Virus record (IMG/VR): IMGVR_UViG_3300036944_001324
Location: 1-64,000 of that record
Length of the DNA: 64,000 nucleotides
Reading direction: 5' to 3' (one strand)
The notes below the pieces were generated by a model, which had not been told where the DNA came from, did not search any database, and worked only from the letters and a program-made list of their open reading frames with translations. A program made the translations under genes and the position numbers. Each line of letters starts with the position of its first letter. Position 1 is the stretch's first letter. Positions 1,653 to 39,463 of the stretch are shown here, one piece after another.

Positions 1653-2825
1653 ATGAACCAAATCATCACCCCCGTCAATGCAGCGGCCGCCATCATGGCT
1701 AACATGCAAACGCCGTACGAAACCAGCATTGACAAGAAAATCTTCAACTTCGAGAAGACGGACTACGCAGAACCTTCCTTGTTCTTCGGTCAGGCCAGCG
1801 GCCTCTTCGACACCATCAACCAACACTACCCACAGCTCAAGCGCCTGTACAGCCGCCTCAAGGTTCTGGACTGGGGTGAAACAGAATTCCCCTTCTCGCA
1901 GTGCAATCTGGAGTTCAAACGGATGAAGCCTGAAGTGGCGCGTCCGATGATCGTTCAGCTTGGCTGGCAGTGGGAGACTGACTCCATCGCGGCACGCACC
2001 ATCGCGCCGGTGATGTCCAACTTCCTGACCAACGACACAGCCTTCCGCATGTACCAACGTATTGGGGACAATGAAAGTACCCATGCGGCAACCTACGCCG
2101 AAATCGTGCGGTTCTCTTTTGATAACCCCACTGAAGTGATGGACAGCGTGCTCGGTATCAGCGAAAGCGCTCAGCGCCTGGAAACCGTCTCCAAGGTGTT
2201 TGCTGAAGCCTACAAGGCCGGTCTTGAACTCTCCTTGGGTATTCGCAAGCGTGATCAGGAGACGTTCAACATCTTCTTCATGTTCGTAGTCGCTTTGTTC
2301 ATGATGGAGCGCCTGCAATTCATGATCTCTTTTGGTATCACGTTCACCTACGCGCAGCACAGCCACTTCCTACCCATCGGCAAGGCCGTGCAAAAGATCT
2401 GCCAAGACGAGTATGAAATTCATGCTCTGGCAGGTGCTCACATGTACAACATCCTCATGGACACCGGAGAAGGCATCACTGCTAACTGGGCGTGCCGTGA
2501 TACCATTGTCAAGATGTTCAACGAAATCATGGCGGTGGAGCAAAAATGGCTCCCCTTCCTGCTCGCTGGCAACGAAGACCTCTTTGGCGTTACGCTGCGT
2601 GACTACCAGCAATGGGGTTACTTCTGCGCTGGTGATGTGGCTTCCGTCCTTGGCATCAAGACAGACTTCACAGTTCCAAAGACAGTGCCTATTGACTTCC
2701 TCAAGAACTGGATCAACATCTCGTCGATCCAAGCTTCTTTGCAGGAAGAAAAGAGCGCCGCTTACATGATCGGTGCAGTCATCCGTGACGACATCGGTAA
2801 AGTCTTCGACGTTACGGGCCTCTAA
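1653..2825 (+). CDS. nrdB: Ribonucleotide reductase class Ia beta subunit
   Basis: Di-iron/radical motifs ESTHAATY, MERLQF, DEYEIH; C-terminal Tyr in SAAYM; follows nrdA. Confidence 0.92.
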   Translation: MNQIITPVNAAAAIMANMQTPYETSIDKKIFNFEKTDYAEPSLFFGQASGLFDTINQHYPQLKRLYSRLKVLDWGETEFPFSQCNLEFKRMKPEVARPMIVQLGWQWETDSIAARTIAPVMSNFLTNDTAFRMYQRIGDNESTHAATYAEIVRFSFDNPTEVMDSVLGISESAQRLETVSKVFAEAYKAGLELSLGIRKRDQETFNIFFMFVVALFMMERLQFMISFGITFTYAQHSHFLPIGKAVQKICQDEYEIHALAGAHMYNILMDTGEGITANWACRDTIVKMFNEIMAVEQKWLPFLLAGNEDLFGVTLRDYQQWGYFCAGDVASVLGIKTDFTVPKTVPIDFLKNWINISSIQASLQEEKSAAYMIGAVIRDDIGKVFDVTGL

Positions 2826-2833
2826 GGCTTGTC

Positions 2834-3337
2834 ATGAAGATCGGACTGATCTTTGCCAAAGGCACCAACGAGGCCTTTGGCTACAAGAACGCGCTTCCTT
2901 GGGGACGTAACAAGGAAGACATGAAGCACTTCGCTGACATCACCAAAGGTCACGCAGTGCTCATGGGGCGCAACACTTGGGAGAGTCTGCCAGAGGCTTA
3001 CCGGCCTTTGCCAGACCGCACCAACATCATCATGACCCATAGTCAGATGTTACTGCCTAAGGGCAACTTTCACGTATCTTCTTTTGAAGAAGCTATGGCT
3101 GTCGCTAAGTTCAGTCATCGCGATGAGCTCTGGCTCATCGGTGGTGCCAGCCTGTTGCAGTCACTCCAACACCATGCAAGTATTGCCATTGTCACAGAAA
3201 TCGATACAGCATGTACGTTCGATGTACAGGCTCCGGTTCTGGATAAAAGCTGGCAATTAAAAGACACATGCCCAGCATCATTTGAAGGCATAGGTCAGTT
3301 CGGTACCACGTACCGTTTCCACACCTACTGTCGCTGA
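2834..3337 (+). CDS. folA: Dihydrofolate reductase
   Basis: LPWG..EDMKHF, VLMGRNTWESLP, RPLPDRTNI, IGGA. Confidence 0.95.
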   Translation: MKIGLIFAKGTNEAFGYKNALPWGRNKEDMKHFADITKGHAVLMGRNTWESLPEAYRPLPDRTNIIMTHSQMLLPKGNFHVSSFEEAMAVAKFSHRDELWLIGGASLLQSLQHHASIAIVTEIDTACTFDVQAPVLDKSWQLKDTCPASFEGIGQFGTTYRFHTYCR

Positions 3338-3370
3338 TACTCTGTCCGCTGCGCTTTGCCGCGCTTTTTA

Positions 3371-3413
3371 ACTACCTCGGTGCTTCGGCACTGGGGTAGT
3401 CTTTTTATGCTGT
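3371..3413 (+). terminator. Intrinsic terminator-like hairpin ending TTTTTATGCTGT
   Basis: ACTACCTCGGTGC-TTCG-GCACTGGGGTAGT plus conserved 3' flank. Confidence 0.75.
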
Positions 3414-3417
3414 AAAA

Positions 3418-4266
3418 ATGAACTACCAACCTTTTACACCCAAAACCCATCAAGAGCTCGCTCAATTGCTGGTGGACTCCAATAACCCCGCTGTCTGTAT
3501 CCAGCACTTTTCCAACGAGGGCTACGACCCCGATGAGATACAAAGCCAAATTACCAGCTTGATCAATCAGACGTCGTTGGTTGGTCGAACGCTGCGGGTA
3601 GGGGACGCAGCCATGCCGGTGAACAACCTGTGCCCGCAACCTACCGTGGAAAACGGTGTGTTTAAAACACCGCACGGTGCACGCATTCTTTTTGAGATGC
3701 AAGACCCCCACATCGTCCTGTACGATAACTTCATCACTCCGCTGGAATGCGATCAACTCATTGCGTTGTGCGCTGAACGCTTCAATCGTTCTTTGGTGGT
3801 CGGTGGTCCTGGTGAGACAGTGGCTGATACCCGGTCCTCACAGACAGCTCACCTTGCCATCGGGCAAGATCCGTACGTCAAGGCTTTGGAAGCCCGTATT
3901 GCCGAAACAGTTCACTGGCCTACTCTCAAAGCAGAGTCCTTGCAAATTATCAAGTATGAGCCAGGCCAGGAATACCAACCACACTACGACTTCTTCGAAT
4001 ACACCGAAGCAAGTCCTTATCTGGTCTCGCCTGGCTTTCAGCGAACAGCGACCATGATCTTGTACCTCCAGGAGCCTGAGGCAGGAGGAGCAACCAGTTT
4101 CCCTCGTCTTCGTCTGAAGGTACCTGCTCGCCGCGGACAGGCACTGTTCTTCAGTTACCCCACCCCAAATATCAACCACCAAACCCTGCACGGTGGTGAC
4201 CCAGTTATCGAAGGTGTGAAGATCATCGCAACAAAATGGTTCAAGACACTCCAGCACGGATGTTGA
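3418..4266 (+). CDS. 2OG-Fe(II) oxygenase, prolyl-4-hydroxylase-like (P4Hc)
   Basis: ECDQLI, RSS, LQIIKY.PGQEY.PHYDFF (HxD), QRTATMILYL, GGATSFP, TLHGG.PV.EG.KIIATKW. Confidence 0.9.
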   Translation: MNYQPFTPKTHQELAQLLVDSNNPAVCIQHFSNEGYDPDEIQSQITSLINQTSLVGRTLRVGDAAMPVNNLCPQPTVENGVFKTPHGARILFEMQDPHIVLYDNFITPLECDQLIALCAERFNRSLVVGGPGETVADTRSSQTAHLAIGQDPYVKALEARIAETVHWPTLKAESLQIIKYEPGQEYQPHYDFFEYTEASPYLVSPGFQRTATMILYLQEPEAGGATSFPRLRLKVPARRGQALFFSYPTPNINHQTLHGGDPVIEGVKIIATKWFKTLQHGC

Positions 4267-4328
4267 AATCTTTATGACGTCCTATATGGACAGCCTAATT
4301 TTCAACTTTCTTATGTGAGAGTCTCTCT

Positions 4329-5960
4329 ATGAAACAATCTGTGCTCTCGTCTCTGGGTCTGACTCATGTAGTCACCGAGAGCGAACAAGTCTTGGCTGCG
4401 CCCGTCAGCCAGATCCCCACTCCTATCGAAGTGACACCTGAGATCATCGAAGAAGTCGCTAAGGTGGCTCACGAAGCCAACCGCGGCATCAGTGAAGGCA
4501 CGCCTTTGTCGTGGGATGACAGTACCGACGAGATTCGCCAAAGCGCCATCGATGGCGTGCAAGCGATCGTCAACGATCCGACCATGACGCCTGAGAAGTC
4601 GCACAACAACTGGATGCGCTGGAAGGAGTCGAATGGCTGGGTCTTTGGTGAAGTCAAAGACGAAGAAGCCAAGACCCATCCCTGCATGGTTCCATACAAC
4701 GAACTGCCTGAAGACGAACGCGTCAAAGACCAAGTGTTCGTGGACACCGTCAAATCGGAGCTGATGAAGTACAAAGCTTCCGATGTCAGCGAAAACGACA
4801 TTCCTTCCCCGATCAACGAACAAGCAGTTCCATCGGAGAGCGATATCGATGAAACCACGATGGCGCTGGAAACACTCCTGGCGGCAGCTGACTTGCTGGA
4901 AAATACGCCTGACGAAGGCATGAACTCCACCAATGCCGAACTGGTGGAGACGATGCTTGCTACTGCTGTTGGTCCTCTGCAAGCCAGCTATGCGGTGCCT
5001 TCAGCCGAGTCGTACAAACACGGCAAGGTAGCGTCGCTCAAGAGCTTCGCCAAAGAAGGCATCATGGAACGCGCCACCGCCATCGTTGCCAAGCTGATGG
5101 AAATGGTCAAACGCATCGTTGCGTTCGTTACCGTCTGGGTGAAAGCTGCATTCAACGAACTCGAACGCGCCAAGGCTTATCTGCTGTACGTGCGTCGTCA
5201 GATCCAGAAATACCGCAACACCAACAAAACTGGTCCGGTTCTGACTACTGAGCGGATGCGTGGCATGACAGCTCCTTCCAACCAATCTGTCAAGGTTGGA
5301 TCTGACTTGGCGAGCAACGCCATCACGATGCTCGGTGAGATGTCCACGCGTTTCGTTACGCTGTCTCGTTTCGCTGGCTCCATGTTCAAAGAAACCGCGG
5401 ACAGCGTTACGGGTGAGTTCAAAGGTTCACACCTGATCAACAACATCTACACCGCTTTGGACAGCCTGGGAGGAACCCTTCACCAGTCCGGTACCAAGGC
5501 TTTCATTCTCTCGTCGAGTGGCTTGGGATGGCGTGAAGGAGGGTTGGTTGCGCAAGGTCAATCCGTACCAGTTGACGTTACGGATATCTACTTCCTGTCA
5601 GGTCAGATCGCGGGTTACCAAGCGCAGACCGAAATCACTGGCCTGTCGTTCTCCGACGCTGACCGTTTCCTGTCACAGTTCGGTCAGATCGTGTCCGTGA
5701 TTGAAACCCACCTGCGAACCATCTCGCAGTATGCTGCTTCTCTGTCCAAGGTCCAGACCATCTTGGAATCCGTGCAGCGCGCCGGTAGCTCGGAGCAACA
5801 TGGCGCCGCTCGCAACAAAGCCAAGTTGCGTGAAATCCGCATGACACTCAAGATGGGTCGCGCTTTGGCCAAAGCTGCGATGCACGTCAAGAGTACGACG
5901 ACTGACGCCATGATTGGCGCGGTTTCTCTGGTCAATCAGTCATCCAAGAACTGGTCGTAA
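4329..5960 (+). CDS. phiKZ-type internal head protein with N-terminal RyR-like domain
   Basis: HNNWMRWK..NGWVFGEVKD...KTHPCMVPYNELP..ERVKD; LLENT and SAE site followed by the WV..F amphipathic helix seen in the other head paralogs. Confidence 0.7.
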   Translation: MKQSVLSSLGLTHVVTESEQVLAAPVSQIPTPIEVTPEIIEEVAKVAHEANRGISEGTPLSWDDSTDEIRQSAIDGVQAIVNDPTMTPEKSHNNWMRWKESNGWVFGEVKDEEAKTHPCMVPYNELPEDERVKDQVFVDTVKSELMKYKASDVSENDIPSPINEQAVPSESDIDETTMALETLLAAADLLENTPDEGMNSTNAELVETMLATAVGPLQASYAVPSAESYKHGKVASLKSFAKEGIMERATAIVAKLMEMVKRIVAFVTVWVKAAFNELERAKAYLLYVRRQIQKYRNTNKTGPVLTTERMRGMTAPSNQSVKVGSDLASNAITMLGEMSTRFVTLSRFAGSMFKETADSVTGEFKGSHLINNIYTALDSLGGTLHQSGTKAFILSSSGLGWREGGLVAQGQSVPVDVTDIYFLSGQIAGYQAQTEITGLSFSDADRFLSQFGQIVSVIETHLRTISQYAASLSKVQTILESVQRAGSSEQHGAARNKAKLREIRMTLKMGRALAKAAMHVKSTTTDAMIGAVSLVNQSSKNWS

Positions 5961-5966
5961 TTCTCT

Positions 5967-6010
5967 GAACCAATCCCGTTCTCACGAGCGGGGTTCCTCT
6001 TTTTCTTTTT
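5967..6010 (+). terminator. Intrinsic terminator
   Basis: CCCGTTC-TCAC-GAGCGGG stem followed by a T-rich tract. Confidence 0.55.
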
Positions 6011-6024
6011 CGGATATTCTAATC

Positions 6025-7335
6025 ATGAGCATTTTTCGTAAACTGGGTCTGGAAAGCACAGTAATTCCTGAAGAAGGTTTGCCCGTTCAAACACCGACAC
6101 CTGAACAAACTCCGGAGCCAACTCAGGCACCTGCTCCCGCCCCAACAGTAACCGGCAATGTTGATGGTGGCGACAGCGGTGTCAACCTCGAGTCCGACGC
6201 TGAAAGCATGCAGCTCGAAGCTGAAGCCGAAACCATGGAAGGCGAAGGCAATGACATCGGTCTGGCAGGCGCTGACATCTCCAAAGCCCTGATCACGCTG
6301 GAGAACATCTCCACCATCTTGGCCAAAGCCCCGGATGAAGAGATCAACGAAACCACTGCAGCGATCGTTGACGCCGCCATCCAGGACATCAACAGCCGCT
6401 TCGACATCGAGAACGCCAAGGAAATCTCGATCGAGTTCTTCCAAGTGCAGGGCGCCAAACAGTACCGCCATAGCGCTAACGAGGCGATCAACGAACGCCT
6501 GGAACAACTCAAGAAAGCAGCCTACGCCGTGGTCGAGAAGATCATCGGTTGGATCAAGCAGTTCTGGAGCTGGCTGACCGCCACCCACAAGAGCACCAAG
6601 AAGAAGTTGGAAGCCGCCATCGCCGCTGCCAAGAACATCACTGTGGATGCCACCGTCACTTTGCCGAAGTACCAAGCAGACCGTCTGGCTTCTGGCGACC
6701 TGGTCGCTTCGACGGTGATCAACAACGGCCGCACGCTCGAAGCAGTGTGCCACAGCTCGACTTTGTTCATCAAGAACGCTTTCCCGAAAGTGATCGGCGC
6801 GCAAATCGCTTTTGTTCTGCGTGAAGAAGGTGTGCATCTGGCCAAGATGTGCTTTGGTAACTTCAAGTCGGCAGGTGACGCGTACGTTCTGTACAGCGGT
6901 ATCGCCGGCCGTCACGTGGAAGTGGACTTCAGTGGCGATGATCCACGCAGTGCCTTCAAGGTGAACGTCTCCAAGGTCTCTTCGGAACGCGGTAGCAACG
7001 AACTGACACTGAAGGAACATGACGTTGACGTGCTGTGTCAGCAGGCTACCCGCACGCTGCAAGCCAGCACGCTTGGCTACGACGAGTGCATGTCCATGAT
7101 TCGCAAGCTCGAAGCATGGCGTGGTTCGGTTGGCGCTGCTGTGGGTGGTCTCGTGTCTCAACGCATCGCTCTCTTGAATAACTACTCTGCAGCGGTGTCC
7201 ACCCTGAGCTCTGTAGGCTACACCGAAGCGCTGCGTTACGCCGATGCAGTGGTTGGCGTTTTGAACGCATACACGAAGGCAGCCAAGCCTGGTAACGATC
7301 TGACCCCCAACACCAACACCCCCCTTCTCAACTAA
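6025..7335 (+). CDS. phiKZ-type internal head protein paralog (start revised from 5914 to MSIFRKLGLES)
   Basis: GLE, NLE, SIE cleavage-type motifs; Pro/Thr-rich acidic N-terminus; IIGWIKQFWSW helix. Confidence 0.7.
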   Translation: MSIFRKLGLESTVIPEEGLPVQTPTPEQTPEPTQAPAPAPTVTGNVDGGDSGVNLESDAESMQLEAEAETMEGEGNDIGLAGADISKALITLENISTILAKAPDEEINETTAAIVDAAIQDINSRFDIENAKEISIEFFQVQGAKQYRHSANEAINERLEQLKKAAYAVVEKIIGWIKQFWSWLTATHKSTKKKLEAAIAAAKNITVDATVTLPKYQADRLASGDLVASTVINNGRTLEAVCHSSTLFIKNAFPKVIGAQIAFVLREEGVHLAKMCFGNFKSAGDAYVLYSGIAGRHVEVDFSGDDPRSAFKVNVSKVSSERGSNELTLKEHDVDVLCQQATRTLQASTLGYDECMSMIRKLEAWRGSVGAAVGGLVSQRIALLNNYSAAVSTLSSVGYTEALRYADAVVGVLNAYTKAAKPGNDLTPNTNTPLLN

Positions 7336-7345
7336 TCATTGAGCC

Positions 7346-7390
7346 GACGGCATAAGAAGGAAGCTTACGGGCTTCCTTCTTTTATGCTGC
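7346..7390. terminator. Conserved-flank palindrome
   Basis: GACGGCATAAGAAGGAAGC-ttacgg-GCTTCCTTCTTTTATGCTGC. Confidence 0.8.
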
Positions 7391-7466
7391 CTAGACAGTT
7401 TTTATTCATACCAAATCAATGGTGTGTTAACTATTTCTACCCATTCGAATACCGAAGGATTTTCTC

Positions 7467-8177
7467 ATGCTGATGTCTGATATCTGGATCAAGGAGCAGT
7501 GTCTCAATAAGGACCGTCCGATGATCACCCCTTTTTATCAAGAATCGATCTCTCACGTGGTCAACGATGTCACGCGCAATCCGCTCGGCGGTCTGATCGC
7601 CAACACCGTTAACACGACGAGCTACGGTCTGTCGTCCTACGGCTACGACTTGAGTCTTGGCAACAAATTCAAAATCTTGCGTTCTGTCAGTGACTTCTAT
7701 CGAGACGAAGTCACTGGTCGTCTGTACGATCGCGACCCCAACGTCATTTACAACGATGGCAAAGGCGCACAAGAAATTGAAATTGATCCCTGCAATTTCA
7801 ACCCACTTCTGTTCCGGGATGTAGAAGTCAAGGACGGCGAGAAGGTGGTCATTCCACCCCGTGGTTTTGCGCTCGGCGTGGTTGGGAACCATCTGGACCT
7901 GCCAGATGACATCATGGGTGTTTGCATGGAGAAATCTACCATTGCCCGTACCGCCATCGAAGTGACGGTCACTCCAGTGGAAGCAGGCTGGCGTGGTTAC
8001 CTCACTCTCGAGATCTGCAACAAGACCGACTACCCGGCAGTTCTGACCGCGGGCATGGGTATCACACAGCTGATGTTCTTCAAGGGTGACCAACCTTGCT
8101 CCGTTCCGTACCATGCGCGCAACGGTAAGTACCAAGATCAACCCGCAGAACCCGTGATTGCACGGATGAAGGATTGA
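7467..8177 (+). CDS. dcd: dCTP deaminase
   Basis: SYGLSSYGYDL, IPPRGFALG, KSTIARTAI.V.VTPVEAGWRGYLTLEI, GITQLMFF, KYQDQ. Confidence 0.93.
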   Translation: MLMSDIWIKEQCLNKDRPMITPFYQESISHVVNDVTRNPLGGLIANTVNTTSYGLSSYGYDLSLGNKFKILRSVSDFYRDEVTGRLYDRDPNVIYNDGKGAQEIEIDPCNFNPLLFRDVEVKDGEKVVIPPRGFALGVVGNHLDLPDDIMGVCMEKSTIARTAIEVTVTPVEAGWRGYLTLEICNKTDYPAVLTAGMGITQLMFFKGDQPCSVPYHARNGKYQDQPAEPVIARMKD

Positions 8178-8716: not shown

Positions 8717-8900
8717 ATGGCGCAGCAGACAGTACTCATCGGACACGAAAGCAACGTCATCTCCACACTGCTTCGGGAGATGCTTAAAGCCTGGATCGAG
8801 GAAGATACAGACATCCGCTACTGTTGTCTTGATACCAGTGCCTAACGGGTTCACTAACCTCGAAGCCCGCGCGTTTATACGTCGGATCACCAACACGTGA
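8717..8900 (+). pseudogene. Small ORF apparently split by a +1 frameshift near 8815
   Basis: Frame 1 MAQQTV...EEDTDI stops at 8845; the +1 frame ATVVLIPVPNGFTNLEARAFIRRITNT ends at TGA 8898-8900, overlapping the GTG start of the next gene. Confidence 0.35.
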
Positions 8901-9478
8901 AACTCAAACAACGCCCGATCATGCGAAGACCTTTCGCCACAGAAAAGGTCTTCGCAGGTATTGGCAACAGAGATGCACCAGAATGGGCCTTGAAGCTGTG
9001 CTCTTTGATTTCTGACATCCTTGCCAGTAGTGGTTACATCCTACGCTCCGGCGGGGCACCCGGATGTGATCAAGCTTTTCAGTCTCGGGCAAGCATTCAT
9101 TCAGAGATCTACGTACCGTGGCACGGCTTTGAAGGCTTCCCTATGAGGTGGCCAATACCAGATATCGCCTACGAAGCTGCACTCTACTACAAACCGTCTA
9201 TACGCTACGCCAGTGACGGTGTGGCGTCCATGACTGCTAGAAACATGATGCAGATACTGGGTCCCGATCTCAAGACCAAAGCAGACTTCGTGGTCTGTTA
9301 CACCAAGAACGGCAGACAAGAAAACTACGACGGCTACAAAGACGTATGTGGGACTGACTCAGCCATCACTTGTGCTAGAGACAACGGAATCCCGGTCATC
9401 AACATCTGCAATCCTGGTTGGTCTGAATACCTCTCAGCGATTACAGGTTTGGACTTCTTACACTTGGAGAACGCATGA
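8897..9478 (+). CDS. DprA/Smf-like (SLOG-fold) nucleotide-binding protein
   Basis: FAGIGNR, LRSGGAPGCDQAF, EIYVPW.GF, ARN..QILG, DFVVCYT, IPVIN. Confidence 0.7.
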   Translation: MKLKQRPIMRRPFATEKVFAGIGNRDAPEWALKLCSLISDILASSGYILRSGGAPGCDQAFQSRASIHSEIYVPWHGFEGFPMRWPIPDIAYEAALYYKPSIRYASDGVASMTARNMMQILGPDLKTKADFVVCYTKNGRQENYDGYKDVCGTDSAITCARDNGIPVINICNPGWSEYLSAITGLDFLHLENA

Positions 9479-11716: not shown

Positions 11717-13021
11717 TTAGGCTTTAGCAGCCAGGCGTTGAGCGTTAACGAACAGGTCGTTATGTGCCAGTAGCTCGATGTCACGCTCCAGACGGAACGC
11801 AAAAGAAGCACGGCGGTTGGAAGTGAAGATATTGGCGATGTCTTCTGCAAGGGTAGTAAGTTCTCGACCACCCTTGAGCATTTTGTCAATGCTGTCAAGT
11901 TCTTTAAGAAGCCGTTCACGTGTGACGTGGTCCAACTCGAAGTTTTTGAGTTGAGCTACAACTGTTTCACGGATGCGCTGGAGGCGAACGTAAGGTTTGT
12001 CGTACTGGTTGGCTTGTTGGATAAAACGATCGCCACGACCACTGTAGAAGATCGTGGTTGCTGTGAGCAAAATACCAACCGCTATCCCAGCGCCAAAAGA
12101 AGCAAATCCGAGCGTAATACCCGCTAGCATAGAAACAGTCACTGGTCCCACGTAAAGCAGGAAGCTCTCAAAAGCGTTAACCCGACCCATTTCAGAATCG
12201 TACTCAGAACCAGCCCAGATACTGGCCAAGTCTTCAGCGAAGCCCCATTTGGCGGCAAAGTTATCTGCCAGAGCTTCACAGTTCACGCCAGCTACAGAGT
12301 TGTCCCCAAAGTCCGTTGCCAGTTTATGGTAGGTTCGAGCGAACACCACTGTAGAGATAGCGGTATCGTCTTTCATCGTGACACACTCGATGAACTCACG
12401 CGGATTACCGGTCAGGTCATTGGCAGCCACTTCCAGCGCATGCTCGTACGTAATACTGGTGTCGGTACCGACGCGAACTTGGTGCAGGCTTGCCAGAATT
12501 TGGGAAGCACGCACAGTGCGGTACATCAATTCAAAGGCAATAAACAAATGCCCGATCTCATGCATGAGAGCAGCCGCACACTGTCGAGGCGTGAAATTAG
12601 CTTTGCAAAACCGGAAACCCATTACTACGGGCGACACAAAAGTGGAATAAATCCCACCGATCTTGCCGTTCTTCAAATCAACAAAACCCTTTTTGGTGTT
12701 GGATTTTTTGATAGCCTCGATGAAACGGTTGGTCTCGGAGTTATAACCGTTATCAAAAATAATGGTACTCAAAACGTGCCGAGAATTTGCCATGACTGGC
12801 AGACACCCCGGCGGAATGAACGTATTGAGTTGAAGATCAATCTTGATGCCAAGACGATTGAAGACCAAGTCCACAATAGCCTTACAGGCCTTCGAGTCTT
12901 GTGCTTCGCGCATTGACCGACACTCGTACACTTGTTCGAACAACGCAGTCAGCTTGTCGCCGAAGTCATTCGTTTGTTGTGCAATCAGCTCGCAAGCAAT
13001 AGCACGTGCTTTGTGGTTCAT
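11717..13021 (-). CDS. Zincin-like (HExxH) putative virion metallopeptidase with hydrophobic segments (start revised to MNHKARA)
   Basis: AAALMHEIGH and EALADNFA..WGF; hydrophobic stretch LLYVGPVTVSMLAGITLGFASFGAGIAVGILL. Confidence 0.65.
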   Translation of the reverse strand: MNHKARAIACELIAQQTNDFGDKLTALFEQVYECRSMREAQDSKACKAIVDLVFNRLGIKIDLQLNTFIPPGCLPVMANSRHVLSTIIFDNGYNSETNRFIEAIKKSNTKKGFVDLKNGKIGGIYSTFVSPVVMGFRFCKANFTPRQCAAALMHEIGHLFIAFELMYRTVRASQILASLHQVRVGTDTSITYEHALEVAANDLTGNPREFIECVTMKDDTAISTVVFARTYHKLATDFGDNSVAGVNCEALADNFAAKWGFAEDLASIWAGSEYDSEMGRVNAFESFLLYVGPVTVSMLAGITLGFASFGAGIAVGILLTATTIFYSGRGDRFIQQANQYDKPYVRLQRIRETVVAQLKNFELDHVTRERLLKELDSIDKMLKGGRELTTLAEDIANIFTSNRRASFAFRLERDIELLAHNDLFVNAQRLAAKA

Positions 13022-13223
13022 AGTTAGTCGCAGAAAAGAAAATGGAGCCACTACCCTCCGCATGACGCAGCAAGGGTAGCAGTTTGAAATTAAGCACATG
13101 ATTTAACAACTTTTATTCCTTCCCTATGCAGGAAGTCACACAAGACGCTTTTTTAGACACCGCCCAGGTATCCTAATGTATAAAGCCAGTCGTTCACTGG
13201 CTTAAAGTCTACCCCCAAACAAC

Positions 13224-14956: not shown

Positions 14957-15499
14957 ATGTTTGACCACTTGGTTTCACAACTCACCAAAGGCACTCCAAA
15001 AACATCCGAGGTCTGGTTGGAGTCTGCTCCTAACAAAAAATCTGCGACGGTAAGGAGCGTTGCAATCAAGATGCGTAACGTAGAGTCTGGAGAGATATTT
15101 CTTTTCCAGTCATTGGCAGCAGCCGGCCGATACTTTCGCATATCTGACCTGCGCATGATCAAGGGATTGGTTGATAACCCAGAACGGATGTGGCGCGGTC
15201 ATCAAGCTAAACCCTTGAAAGACAAGACTGATTGGGTGTCTCCTATCCAAAATAACGAATCCGTTTCCAAGGTCGTTAAAGGTGTCAATCACACTTACTA
15301 CCTCATCACTTGGAAGGATACCGGTGAGGAACAAGTTTGCATCGGATACGAGCAGGCTGCCTCCATTACTGGTGTAACCAGATCGTATCTCTCCAAGCTG
15401 GTGTGTTATGGTGACAAACCTAACAAACTCAACTTCAGTATCAGGAAAGCTTCGCAAGAAGATGTCCTCAGATACGAAAGCGGTCCAGTTACCGACTAA
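14957..15499 (+). CDS. NUMOD1/HTH-like repeat DNA-binding protein
   Basis: Two repeats of I..r...tGE...f.s...A; paralog of 15604..16176. Confidence 0.55.
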   Translation: MFDHLVSQLTKGTPKTSEVWLESAPNKKSATVRSVAIKMRNVESGEIFLFQSLAAAGRYFRISDLRMIKGLVDNPERMWRGHQAKPLKDKTDWVSPIQNNESVSKVVKGVNHTYYLITWKDTGEEQVCIGYEQAASITGVTRSYLSKLVCYGDKPNKLNFSIRKASQEDVLRYESGPVTD

Positions 15500-15501
15500 G
15501 C

Positions 15502-15540
15502 AAAAAGAGAAAGTCTCATCAGCTTTCTCTTTTATGCCGT
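15502..15540 (+). terminator. Hairpin with conserved 3' flank
   Basis: AAAAAGAGAAAG-tctcatcag-CTTTCTCTTTTATGCCGT. Confidence 0.75.
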
Positions 15541-26380: not shown

Positions 26381-26387
26381 CCACTGA

Positions 26388-26431
26388 GACAGCATAAGAG
26401 GCTCCCTTGCGGGAGCCTCTTTTTATGCCGT
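26388..26431. terminator. Conserved-flank palindrome between convergent genes
   Basis: GACAGCATAAGAGGCTCCC-TTGC-GGGAGCCTCTTTTTATGCCGT. Confidence 0.82.
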
Positions 26432-39380: not shown

Positions 39381-39463
39381 GCATAAAGCACTGCAAGGGT
39401 GGTAACCCTTGTGAGTTCCTGCAACGGGAGGAGAGGCTGCAAGGCCTCTCCTTTTATGCCGTC
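39381..39463 (+). terminator. Composite two-hairpin conserved-flank element
   Basis: GCATAAAG...CAAGGGT-GGTA-ACCCTTG...GGAGAGGC-TGCAAG-GCCTCTCC-TTTTATGCCGTC. Confidence 0.7.

What the first reader, a model, noticed from the sequence alone, without database searches (positions are those of the whole stretch)
3418..4266. Host-type prolyl-4-hydroxylase placed next to Pro-rich virion proteins
The full P4Hc signature (HxD...H...K) is present with an N-terminal helical extension, resembling the betaproteobacterial version. It sits between DHFR and two head proteins with Pro-rich N-termini (PTPIEVTP; PTPEQTPEPTQAPAPAP). Established: the PBCV-1 virus P4H hydroxylates Pro-rich repeats, and a Pseudomonas PPHD hydroxylates EF-Tu. 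Inference: this phage may hydroxylate its own virion propeptides or a host translation factor. Its position in the nucleotide-metabolism run leaves a nucleotide substrate as an alternative.
Basis: partly seen in the sequence, partly recalled or inferred. Interest (0 to 1): 0.62.

Follow-up and report, generated by a model that had tools for sequence, protein, structure and literature searches.

The report
Jumbo-phage prolyl 4-hydroxylase, target unknown
An uncultured giant phage carries an intact collagen-type prolyl 4-hydroxylase, related to an enzyme of Comamonadaceae bacteria, that is probably transcribed with an internal head protein gene; what it hydroxylates is still open, as for the many similar genes in phage metagenomes.

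Summary
The ORF at 3418-4266 (+) is real and encodes a 282-residue Fe(II)/2-oxoglutarate peptidyl-prolyl 4-hydroxylase of the collagen type. Its closest solved relatives are the Bacillus anthracis, Chlamydomonas, human C-P4H and PBCV-1 enzymes, not the PHD/PPHD type. The metal, 2OG and peptide-clamping residues are all present and invariant in the family.

A 50-residue N-terminal three-helix domain is shared only with chromosomal enzymes of Comamonadaceae/Burkholderiales, where the gene lies in a yaaA-p4h-(hydrolase)-queF cluster. The phage clade sits on a long branch and is not a recent capture.

The order DHFR-P4H-internal head proteins holds across the whole active phage clade. A terminator-like hairpin separates P4H from DHFR, and none separates it from the first head protein gene.

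The link to proline-rich tracts is weak. Only IP2 has a real tract. It is huge in one relative, absent in two others that keep P4H, and length-polymorphic between strains. A distant jumbo phage has a catalytically dead copy beside dCTP deaminase with no head protein genes.

Two unrelated phage lineages (an inovirus and a podovirus type) also place a P4H beside Pro-rich virion-module proteins.

The enzyme identity is solid. The substrate is unresolved between the phage's own head proteins and a host protein such as EF-Tu. A nucleotide substrate is unlikely.

The parts
2834..3337 (+). Dihydrofolate reductase. It is the last gene of the upstream RNR-alpha / RNR-beta / DHFR run.
   Evidence: PF00186 at 8.3e-32 and phrog_316 at 1.6e-39.
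3371..3400 (+). Terminator-like hairpin (13-bp stem, 4-nt loop) followed by CTTTTTATGC. It separates DHFR from P4H.
   Evidence: Found by the terminator scan. The intergenic fold is -28.8 kcal/mol with z -3.97. It is conserved in L002, L004 and L005.
3404..3412 (+). TTTATGCTG motif, 14 nt before the P4H ATG. It is one of 44 genome-wide copies of hairpin + TTTATGC[CT]G and is a candidate unit boundary or promoter element.
   Evidence: Pattern count and positions. The next copy on this strand is at 7381, after IP2.
3418..4266 (+). Prolyl 4-hydroxylase, 282 aa.
3439..3588 (+). N-terminal three-helix domain (residues 8-57), shared with the Comamonadaceae enzymes. Its function is unknown.
   Evidence: AF2 places helices at 8-21, 24-33/34 and 38-57/58, with pLDDT about 90. 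It aligns with the bacterial N-termini, with G35 invariant. Only weak CW_7/UBA-like sequence hits were found, and no fold match below E 0.6.
3646..4263 (+). Double-stranded beta-helix catalytic domain (residues 77-282). Iron ligands: H189, D191, H258. 2OG contacts: K268, Y180, T212. Peptide contacts: Y186, E173, R209, W274, R139, S141, Q176.
   Evidence: Foldseek gives 3gze at 1.7e-18 with TM 0.81 by target. Residue mapping comes from the HMMER alignment to 3gze/2jig. Residue roles are from PMC9676403 and PMC5684110.
4267..4328 (+). P4H-IP1 spacer with no terminator-like structure. It begins with AATCTTTATGACGTC, which is conserved in all four phages.
   Evidence: Fold z is only -1.6. A contig from an RNA library spans 4162-4420 (weak evidence).
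4329..5960 (+). IP1: a RyR domain fused to a phiKZ-like internal head protein, 543 aa.
   Evidence: PF02026 at 2e-11 and PF12699 at 7.6e-9. Orthologues are found in L002, L004 and L005.
5972..5995 (+). Terminator-like hairpin followed by a T-run, between IP1 and IP2.
   Evidence: z -3.23.
6025..7335 (+). IP2: a phiKZ-like internal head protein, 436 aa counted from MSIFRKLGLES.
   Evidence: PF12699 at 3.2e-10, plus phrog_6807 and phrog_2497 'internal head protein'. Alignment A1 has an invariant T-L-E motif at residues 91-93.
6082..6144 (+). Pro-rich TP/EP/AP tract of IP2 (residues 20-40).
   Evidence: It is expanded to about 85 residues in L004 and absent in L002 and L005. A 30-nt deletion at 6090 occurs in run X2.
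7348..7389 (+). Long palindromic hairpin containing TTTATGCTG. It lies between IP2 and dCTP deaminase.
   Evidence: z -3.52.
7467..8177 (+). dCTP deaminase.
   Evidence: PF22769 at 3e-23 and phrog_1663 at 6.9e-52.

Best explanation
The gene encodes an active Fe(II)/2-oxoglutarate peptidyl-prolyl 4-hydroxylase of the collagen-type branch (BaP4H, Cr-P4H, C-P4H, PBCV-1 vCPH).

Mechanism, inferred from homology:
- H189, D191 and H258 hold the iron.
- K268, Y180 and T212 hold 2-oxoglutarate.
- The E173-R209 pair, Y186, W274 and R139/S141 clamp an extended X-Pro-X peptide.
- The target proline is then hydroxylated at C4.

The gene is an old, vertically kept accessory gene of an uncultured phiKZ-like jumbo phage lineage. 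Its two-domain architecture matches a chromosomal enzyme of Comamonadaceae.

My leading guess for the substrate is prolines in the disordered N-terminal, propeptide-like segments of the internal head proteins that follow it. These are IP1, with which it seems to be co-transcribed, and IP2, with its TP/AP tract.

Shown: the enzyme family, the intact active site and the gene order. Inferred: activity, co-transcription and the substrate.
For: Enzyme identity: with residue roles.

Gene order:
- DHFR-P4H-IP is kept in every contig of the active clade: L002, L003, L004, L005, the P0007 contig and L169. P4H identity in these falls as low as 42%.
- A strong terminator-like hairpin lies between DHFR and P4H, and none lies between P4H and IP1.
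- An RNA-library contig crosses the P4H/IP1 junction.

Substrate type: the IP2 tract is a repeated X-Pro sequence of the kind bound by the best fold match, 3gze with (Ser-Pro)5.

Substrate-binding loop: the betaII-betaIII loop is fixed differently in the phage clade (YL[AV][ST]P[GN]FQR) than in bacteria (ILRRGGQR). This fits a changed substrate.

Independent parallels:
- Inovirus contigs L041, L055, L057 and L075 carry a short P4H about 1 kb upstream of a pIII-like protein with a (TP)n linker of up to about 100 residues.
- Podovirus-like contigs carry a P4H between the portal gene and Pro-rich proteins.
Against: - The Pro-rich tract is absent from the IP2 orthologues in L002, L005 and P0095, although L002 and L005 keep P4H. 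It also varies in length between strains.
- IP1 has no real Pro-rich tract.
- The distant jumbo contig L178 has a P4H-like gene directly upstream of dCTP deaminase and DprA, with no IP genes.
- In these genomes virion and replication genes are interleaved, so neighbourhood is weak evidence.
- The tract lies upstream of an invariant T-L-E motif that may be a prohead-protease site. If so, the tract may be removed from mature virions.
- The P4H-like genes of Erwinia phage Y3 and Salmonella phage Sen-NF are not near head genes.
- No control set was available for the frequency of Pro-rich ORFs near phage P4H genes.
Confidence: 0.35

Rival explanations
1. The enzyme acts on a host protein. The phage copy keeps the cellular substrate of the Comamonadaceae enzyme, for example EF-Tu or another translation or stress protein. 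It uses this to retune host physiology during infection.
For: - The phage enzyme keeps the whole two-domain architecture of the bacterial enzyme, including the N-terminal domain.
- The bacterial gene sits in a conserved cluster. YaaA lies upstream on the same strand in about 62 of 80 loci, often with a 4-nt overlap. QueF lies downstream in about 63 of 80. It therefore has a cellular role.
- The closest solved relative, BaP4H, is deposited as 'interacts with and modifies elongation factor Tu' (5v7y), and PPHD binds EF-Tu (4iw3).
- P4HA-type genes are among the commonest phage auxiliary genes in water viromes, and their use is 'cryptic' (PMC9301287).
- L178 keeps the gene without IP neighbours.
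Against: - A long branch (2.26 changes per column) separates the phage clade from the bacterial enzymes.
- The substrate-binding loop differs by clade.
- The gene appears to share a transcription unit with a head protein gene rather than with early genes.
- The host and its EF-Tu are unknown, and no binding test was run.
Confidence: 0.3
2. The substrate is a nucleotide, nucleobase or DNA. This is suggested by the DHFR and dCTP deaminase neighbours in the phage and by QueF in bacteria.
For: - The gene lies between DHFR and dCTP deaminase.
- In L178 it lies directly before dCTP deaminase.
- QueF is downstream in most bacterial loci.
- Weak PHROG hits carry the label 'DNA endonuclease'.
Against: - All residues that position the peptide and the proline ring in Cr-P4H (E127, R161, Y140, W243, R93, S95) are invariant here.
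- The best sequence and fold matches are all protein prolyl hydroxylases. Nucleic-acid oxygenases rank far lower (a host-guest DNA lesion entry, 3h8r, at E 3.5e-7).
- There is no Pfam match to any nucleic-acid oxygenase family.
- The bacterial synteny is largely inherited within one family, so the counts are not independent.
Confidence: 0.06
3. The enzyme is a free-proline or small-molecule hydroxylase, or mainly a sink or sensor for 2OG and O2. The neighbouring genes are irrelevant.
For: Phage 2OG oxygenases are often discussed as metabolic auxiliary genes. No substrate is known for any phage P4H.
Against: The peptide-clamping residues and the two substrate loops are conserved within the clade. 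Sequence similarity is to peptidyl hydroxylases.
Confidence: 0.07
4. The gene is a decaying or non-catalytic remnant.
For: In L178 the homologue has Tyr in place of the distal His and Glu in place of the 2OG lysine.
Against: In the window and in all six other members of its clade, every catalytic residue is kept despite identity as low as 42%.
Confidence: 0.03

Closest known systems
Bacillus anthracis prolyl 4-hydroxylase (PDB 3itq, 5hv0, 5v7y)
   Same: It is the best sequence match among solved structures, at E 1.6e-31 and 33-36% identity over residues 81-276. It has the same HxD...H...K residues and the same fold.
   Different: BaP4H has no N-terminal three-helix domain. Its betaII-betaIII loop is shorter and unrelated in sequence.
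Chlamydomonas reinhardtii P4H-1 (PDB 2jig, 3gze with a (Ser-Pro)5 peptide)
   Same: It is the best fold match, at E 1.7e-18 and TM 0.81 by target. All peptide-contact residues are conserved: E127, Q130, Y140, R161, W243, R93 and S95 correspond to E173, Q176, Y186, R209, W274, R139 and S141.
   Different: Cr-P4H lacks the N-terminal domain. It has a longer insertion before betaVI, and His245 is replaced by Lys276 in the phage enzyme.
PBCV-1 viral collagen prolyl hydroxylase (PDB 5c5t)
   Same: It is a virus-encoded P4H of the same branch, at E 1.2e-19. It is reported to hydroxylate proline-rich repeats encoded by the virus itself (Eriksson et al. 1999, as cited in PMC9301287).
   Different: It comes from a eukaryotic algal virus and has a different N-terminus. 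No common origin with the phage gene is shown.
Comamonadaceae/Burkholderiales yaaA-linked 2OG-Fe(II) oxygenase (for example in Acidovorax, Xenophilus, Roseateles, Polaromonas)
   Same: It has the same length and the same two-domain architecture. Single alignments span residues 4-276 at 33-38% identity.
   Different: The phage lacks yaaA and queF. The phage clade is on a long branch and has a different substrate loop. As far as I could find, the bacterial enzyme is itself uncharacterised.
Pseudomonas PPHD / human PHD2 (PDB 4iw3, 4j25)
   Same: [quoted passage not shown] PPHD acts on EF-Tu.
   Different: They are only a distant fold match (E 5e-9, 19% identity) and gave no phmmer hit at E <= 0.01. 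The window protein belongs to the collagen-type branch, not the PHD branch.
Short P4HA-type genes of aquatic phages (KEGG K00472, phrog_61)
   Same: The catalytic domain is the same, at 36-44% identity in 137 viral contigs. They are annotated as auxiliary metabolic genes of unknown use.
   Different: Most are about 200 aa and lack the N-terminal domain, or about 380 aa with a different extension. They form a separate group in the tree.

Membership tests
Collagen-type prolyl 4-hydroxylases (P4Hc: C-P4H, Cr-P4H, BaP4H, vCPH) | Significant sequence similarity to characterised members | tested here: met
   phmmer E values are 1.6e-31 (BaP4H), 3.7e-23 (Cr-P4H), 5e-20 (C-P4H alpha-2) and 1.2e-19 (vCPH). 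PF13640 scores 52.6 bits against a cut-off of 27.
Collagen-type prolyl 4-hydroxylases (P4Hc: C-P4H, Cr-P4H, BaP4H, vCPH) | Double-stranded beta-helix fold | tested here: met
   The AF2 model has mean pLDDT 86.9. The top 32 Foldseek matches are all P4Hs of this branch, with TM by target of 0.73-0.82 for the leading rows.
Collagen-type prolyl 4-hydroxylases (P4Hc: C-P4H, Cr-P4H, BaP4H, vCPH) | His-x-Asp...His iron triad | tested here: met
   H189, D191 and H258 align to Cr-P4H H143, D145 and H227 and are invariant in 57 sequences.
Collagen-type prolyl 4-hydroxylases (P4Hc: C-P4H, Cr-P4H, BaP4H, vCPH) | Lys on strand betaVIII (with Tyr and Thr) binding the 2OG C5 carboxylate | tested here: met
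   K268, Y180 and T212 are aligned and conserved. Their roles are taken from PMC9676403.
Collagen-type prolyl 4-hydroxylases (P4Hc: C-P4H, Cr-P4H, BaP4H, vCPH) | Residues that position the peptide (Cr-P4H Y140, E127-R161, W243) | tested here: met
   Y186, E173, R209 and W274 are invariant. Their roles are taken from PMC9676403 and PMC5684110.
Collagen-type prolyl 4-hydroxylases (P4Hc: C-P4H, Cr-P4H, BaP4H, vCPH) | Formation of trans-4-hydroxyproline in a peptide | not testable with these tools
   This needs an enzyme assay or mass spectrometry.
PHD/EGLN-type prolyl hydroxylases (PPHD, PHD2) | Closer to PHD-type than to collagen-type enzymes | tested here: not met
   No PHD or PPHD chain was found by phmmer at E <= 0.01. 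Foldseek gives 4iw3 at 5e-9 and 19% identity, against 1.7e-18 for 3gze.
PHD/EGLN-type prolyl hydroxylases (PPHD, PHD2) | Binding and hydroxylation of EF-Tu switch I | not tested
   The host and its EF-Tu are unknown.
Burkholderiales yaaA-linked two-domain P4H | N-terminal three-helix domain joined to the P4H domain by a disordered linker | tested here: met
Burkholderiales yaaA-linked two-domain P4H | Placement inside the bacterial clade in a tree | tested here: inconclusive
   The phage clade of 7 rows is separated by a branch of 2.26. The tree is unrooted and carries a long-branch warning.
Burkholderiales yaaA-linked two-domain P4H | yaaA upstream and queF downstream | tested here: not met
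   Both are common in the bacterial loci and absent from the phage genome.
phiKZ-like internal head proteins (the two neighbours) | Match to PF12699 above the gathering score | tested here: met
   Scores are 35.7 and 40.2 bits against a cut-off of 27. PHROGs label IP2 'internal head protein'. Presence in virions was not testable.
Nucleic-acid 2OG oxygenases (AlkB, TET/JBP) | Sequence or fold closer to these than to protein hydroxylases | tested here: not met
   There is no Pfam hit to these families. The only nucleic-acid-related fold match, 3h8r, ranks 45th at E 3.5e-7.
CW_7 / UBA-like three-helix modules (N-terminal domain) | Match above the family threshold | tested here: not met
   CW_7 scores 11.8 bits against a cut-off of 25. 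UBA and RuvA_C are hit by single members only. Against 5i8l, each repeat matches at E 0.15-0.48. No fold match falls below E 0.6.

The most novel reading that the evidence does not exclude
Phage-encoded collagen-type P4Hs hydroxylate prolines in disordered TP/AP/EP-rich segments of the phage's own virion or morphogenesis proteins. Here the targets would be the internal head proteins of a jumbo phage. In other lineages they would be the pIII-like adsorption protein of an inovirus and head-module proteins of podoviruses. Hydroxyproline would then be a previously unrecognised post-translational modification of bacteriophage particles, and the abundant 'cryptic' P4HA genes of viromes would have an explanation.
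Probability: 0.3. Interest if true: 0.72.

Novelty: new member of a known kind. Interest (0 to 1): 0.45.

Why it matters
P4HA-type genes are among the most frequent auxiliary genes in aquatic phage metagenomes, and nobody knows what they do (PMC9301287). This locus gives a concrete, cheap test.

- The enzyme is intact.
- Two candidate substrates are encoded immediately downstream, probably on the same transcript.
- A bacterial sister enzyme offers a comparison.

A positive result would establish hydroxyproline in phage particles. A negative result with host EF-Tu hydroxylation would show a new route of host takeover. The conserved yaaA-p4h cluster in Comamonadaceae is also an uncharacterised bacterial system that the same assays would open up.

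Tried and rejected
- **Megablast.** A search of 2800-7400 against isolated phages found nothing. The lineage has no cultured close relative.
- **NCBIfam.** No match for P4H, IP1 or IP2.
- **Collagen-like repeats.** A genome-wide search for G-x-y runs found no true repeats, only two short Gly-rich runs. A collagen substrate is therefore rejected.
- **Complex prediction.** P4H + IP2 residues 1-90 + Fe gave no answer (score 0.00, controls not run). This is not evidence either way.
- **N-terminal domain.**
  - The profile search hit the CW_7 repeats of the Cpl-7 lysozyme only weakly.
  - A separate model gave only generic three-helix matches.
  - Its identity is left open. My idea that it might resemble the EF-Ts N-terminal UBA-like domain found no support.
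- **IP2 relatives.**
  - None were found in viral contigs.
  - The word search found only two. A correlation test between tract and enzyme across many genomes was therefore impossible.
- **Burkholderia phage FLC9.** It is the nearest isolate by a virion protein. It has no RNR-beta match, so its equivalent region could not be compared.
- **Control set for Pro-rich ORFs.** A dCTP deaminase scan of viral contigs, meant to supply controls, returned one locus (L178). That locus was informative in another way.
- **tRNAs, YaaA and QueF.** None are present in the phage.
- **RNA-library contigs.** They cover parts of P4H, IP1, IP2 and DCD. They are contigs of low depth and may be DNA carry-over, so they do not establish transcription or operon structure.
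- **Limits observed.**
  - The large exhaustive protein search was not used, because the family assignment was already clear.
  - No alternative genetic code was used.
  - Read laying was given 5,601 letters.
Full report
**What is there.**
The window is the first 64 kb of a 271,654-bp, about 99% complete viral record. The ORF at 3418-4266 (+) runs from ATG to a stop and encodes 282 residues.
- It passes Pfam PF13640 at 52.6 bits against a cut-off of 27.
- By phmmer it matches solved prolyl 4-hydroxylases of the collagen type: B. anthracis P4H at E 1.6e-31, Chlamydomonas P4H-1 at 3.7e-23, human C-P4H alpha-2 at 5e-20 and the PBCV-1 enzyme at 1.2e-19.
- No PHD or PPHD chain appears at E <= 0.01.

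**Structure.**
An AlphaFold2 model built on 57 homologues has mean pLDDT 86.9. It shows:
- a three-helix N-terminal domain (residues 8-57);
- a disordered linker (about 58-76);
- a double-stranded beta-helix domain (77-282).

Foldseek ranks the algal enzyme with its (Ser-Pro)5 substrate first (3gze, E 1.7e-18, TM 0.81 by target). The B. anthracis, human and PBCV-1 enzymes follow. Pseudomonas PPHD with EF-Tu (4iw3) comes only at E 5e-9 and 19% identity.

**Active site.**
The HMMER alignment to 3gze/2jig gives the following correspondences.

| Window residue | Cr-P4H residue | Role |
|---|---|---|
| H189, D191, H258 | H143, D145, H227 | iron |
| K268 | K237 | 2OG |
| Y180, T212 | the Tyr and Thr that contact 2OG | 2OG |
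| Y186 | Y140 | contacts the target proline |
| E173 / R209 | E127 / R161 | position the peptide |
| W274 | W243 | peptide contact |
| R139 / S141 | R-x-S motif of the hairpin loop | peptide contact |

Residue roles are taken from PMC9676403 and PMC5684110. All of these residues are invariant or nearly so in the 57-sequence family alignment. The enzyme keeps the catalytic residues and also the machinery that holds an extended X-Pro-X peptide. This is the main argument against a nucleotide substrate.

**Relatives.**
A word search found phage relatives at 57-70% identity on contigs of 256-258 kb and on shorter ones. Two fragments match at 49% and 42%. Beyond these come about 285-residue bacterial proteins at 33-45% identity.

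A scan of one genome per species returned 588 relatives. The best 80 are almost all Comamonadaceae/Burkholderiales (Acidovorax, Polaromonas, Rhodoferax, Ottowia, Comamonas, Curvibacter, Ramlibacter, Variovorax, Xenophilus, Roseateles, Delftia), plus a few Lysobacteraceae. Many match residues 4-276 in one piece. The N-terminal domain is thus shared with the bacterial enzymes.

The about 137 other viral contigs with a relative match only the catalytic domain.

In a maximum-likelihood tree the seven jumbo-phage rows form a starred clade. It lies on a branch of 2.26 changes per column, apart from the bacterial and short viral sequences. The tree is unrooted and carries a long-branch warning. 'Host-type' is therefore right for the architecture, but the gene is not a recent capture from an identifiable genus.

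**Host clues.**
The nearest isolated phages, judged by a conserved 994-residue virion protein, are phiKZ-like jumbo phages. They are Burkholderia phage FLC9 (40%), Xanthomonas phages and Ralstonia phages RP12/RP31. None of them has this P4H.

The phage or close kin occurs in shale-gas, wastewater, groundwater, aquifer, biofilm, river and soil metagenomes from at least 13 studies.

**Bacterial context.**
In the 80 bacterial loci, a YaaA (peroxide-stress, DUF328) gene lies upstream on the same strand in about 62, often overlapping the P4H start by 4 nt. QueF lies downstream in about 63, sometimes after an alpha/beta hydrolase.

These counts are not independent, because most loci belong to one family. 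Even so, the bacterial enzyme clearly has a cellular role. The phage has neither yaaA nor queF.

**Phage context.**
The order RNR-alpha, RNR-beta, DHFR, P4H, RyR+phiKZ_IP protein (IP1), phiKZ_IP protein(s) (IP2, and IP3 in some), dCTP deaminase is kept in L002, L004 and L005. The partial contigs agree:
- the P0007 contig has RNR-beta-DHFR-P4H;
- L169, the deepest member at 42% identity, has a DHFR fragment, P4H, a 656-residue protein and then an IP2-like N-terminus.

In L002 and L005 the gene caller truncated the start. The reading frame begins with the same MNY(R/Q)PFT as in the window.

**Intergenic signals.**

| Position | Between | Feature |
|---|---|---|
| 3371-3400 | DHFR and P4H | 13-bp GC-rich hairpin with T-run; intergenic fold z -3.97 |
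| 4267-4328 | P4H and IP1 | no significant structure (z -1.6) |
| 5972-5995 | IP1 and IP2 | hairpin with T-run |
| 7348-7389 | IP2 and dCTP deaminase | long palindromic hairpin |

The motif TTTATGC[CT]G that follows the first and last hairpins occurs 44 times in the genome, nearly always intergenic and after a hairpin. The sequence therefore suggests that P4H is insulated from the nucleotide-metabolism genes upstream and is read together with IP1. This is an inference from sequence.

The only expression data are short, low-depth contigs in wastewater RNA libraries. They cover P4H, the P4H/IP1 junction (4162-4420), IP1, IP2 and the deaminase, and DNA carry-over cannot be excluded.

**The proline-rich link.**
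Genome-wide, only six of 287 ORFs have a window of 20 residues with at least 7 prolines. There are no collagen-like repeats. IP2 residues 20-41 form one of the six tracts. Another lies in a 1,327-residue tail-fibre-like virion protein. The PTPIEVTP of IP1 does not qualify.

Across orthologues the IP2 tract is unstable:
- about 85 residues in L004;
- 22 in the window;
- absent in L002 and L005, which keep an intact P4H;
- absent in P0095;
- moderately Pro-containing and acidic in L169.

A near-identical strain in a wastewater run lacks 30 nt inside the tract. What is conserved is a short [IL]PEEG[LI]xP motif after the N-terminal G-L-E-S, and an invariant T-L-E further on. From what is known of phiKZ and T4 head maturation, I take these as possible prohead-protease sites (my own knowledge, not tested). 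If so, the tract lies in a segment that may be removed from the mature head.

The enzyme therefore cannot depend on the tract. It could still act on individual prolines in these disordered segments.

**Evidence from other phages.**
Against the link:
- The distant 205-kb viral contig L178 has a two-domain P4H-like gene directly before dCTP deaminase and a DprA-like gene, with no IP genes.
- That copy scores closer to the bacterial enzymes than to the window's.
- It has Tyr for the distal His and Glu for the 2OG lysine, so it is probably inactive.
- In Erwinia phage Y3 and Salmonella phage Sen-NF, a short P4H-like gene lies beside an asparagine synthase among replication genes.

For the link:
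- 24 of 63 distinct viral P4H loci have a Pro-rich ORF within 6 kb, though I had no control set.
- Contigs L041, L055, L057 and L075 are inoviruses, with a rolling-circle Rep, an Ace-like minor coat protein and a Zot-like assembly protein. There a 210-residue P4H lies about 1 kb upstream of a pIII-position protein. That protein has a signal peptide, a (TP)n linker of up to about 100 residues and a C-terminal anchor.
- In podovirus-like contigs such as L015, the P4H lies between the portal gene and two Pro-rich proteins.
- These are at most two or three independent events.

**Other tests.**
The substrate-binding betaII-betaIII loop is fixed differently in the phage clade and in the bacterial enzymes. 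This is compatible with a change of substrate.

A complex prediction of P4H with IP2 residues 1-90 gave no answer. The N-terminal domain could not be assigned. It gave weak CW_7/UBA-like sequence hits below threshold and only generic three-helix fold matches.

**Verdict.**
The protein is a new member of the collagen-type P4H family with a Burkholderiales-type N-terminal domain. It has been kept for a long time at the head of the internal-head-protein genes of an uncultured phiKZ-like lineage.

Probabilities I assign:

| Claim | Probability |
|---|---|
| It is an active peptidyl-prolyl hydroxylase | about 0.85 |
| The target is the phage's own head proteins | about 0.35 |
| The target is a host protein such as EF-Tu | about 0.3 |
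| The substrate is a nucleotide | about 0.06 |

The decisive work is biochemical and is listed under next steps.

Noticed in passing
whole genome G000; in the window for example 3371-3412, 7348-7389, 15496-15540, 26387-26431, 39418-39462: There are 44 copies of a GC-rich hairpin followed by TTTATGC[CT]G. Nearly all are intergenic. Many are extended into a palindrome (ACGGCATAA...TTATGCCGT). They may be bidirectional terminators, promoters with a TATG core as in phiKZ late promoters, or a protein-binding site.
   Followed up: partly
window 4329-5960: IP1 fuses a RyR domain (PF02026, residues 88-135) to a phiKZ-like internal head protein. The RyR part alone matches small proteins in many unrelated phages of Escherichia, Salmonella, Aeromonas and Arthrobacter.
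   Followed up: partly
window 6090-6119: A near-identical strain in wastewater run X2 lacks 30 nt in frame inside the Pro-rich tract of IP2.
   Followed up: no
L004 4334-5338: The P4H of this relative is called with a roughly 50-residue N-terminal extension. The extension contains MSKLFG, a T-L-E motif and a Pro-rich stretch (EPATEPEQTVGETPAP), which recalls the N-termini of the internal head proteins. The same phage has the longest IP2 Pro tract. It could be a capsid-targeting propeptide or a miscalled start.
   Followed up: partly
L178 5055-5960 (205-kb viral contig): This is a two-domain P4H-like gene directly upstream of dCTP deaminase and DprA. It has Tyr in place of the distal iron His and Glu in place of the 2OG lysine, so it is probably a pseudo-enzyme. 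It scores closer to the bacterial enzymes than to the window's.
   Followed up: partly
L089-L168 (bacterial loci), for example L006 5138-8719: Comamonadaceae have a conserved yaaA - P4H - (alpha/beta hydrolase) - queF cluster. The yaaA stop and the P4H start often overlap by 4 nt. This is an uncharacterised bacterial system linking a peroxide-stress protein with a prolyl hydroxylase.
   Followed up: partly
L055 3243-6032; also L041, L057, L075: These filamentous-phage (inovirus) contigs carry a 210-residue P4H between the replication and coat modules. About 1 kb downstream is a pIII-like protein with a (TP)n linker of up to about 100 residues.
   Followed up: partly
L015 4881-7461 and about 12 other viral loci: These podovirus-like contigs have the order portal - P4H - small ORF - 322-residue Pro-rich protein - 150-174-residue protein. 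The last protein carries the conserved motif RPKxWxPPxLLPDPxPEPGYxFRW (phrog_36003, unknown function).
   Followed up: partly
L016, L022-L031 and others (viral loci): Many viral P4H ORFs are about 375-405 residues long, with an N-terminal extension of about 180 residues that is unrelated to the three-helix domain. These lengths come from longest-ORF calls and the starts were not checked.
   Followed up: no
L170 (Erwinia phage Y3 13437-15232) and Salmonella phage Sen-NF 12859-13506: In both phages the short P4H-like oxygenase lies beside an asparagine synthase gene.
   Followed up: no
window 11717-13099 (-): This 460-residue protein belongs to phrog_2767 (unknown function) and has an HEIGH motif. 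It may be a zinc metallopeptidase. It has no Pfam match.
   Followed up: no
window 8897-9478: A DprA-like DNA recombination-mediator protein (phrog_768, 1.3e-37) lies downstream of dCTP deaminase. The same pairing is kept in L178.
   Followed up: no
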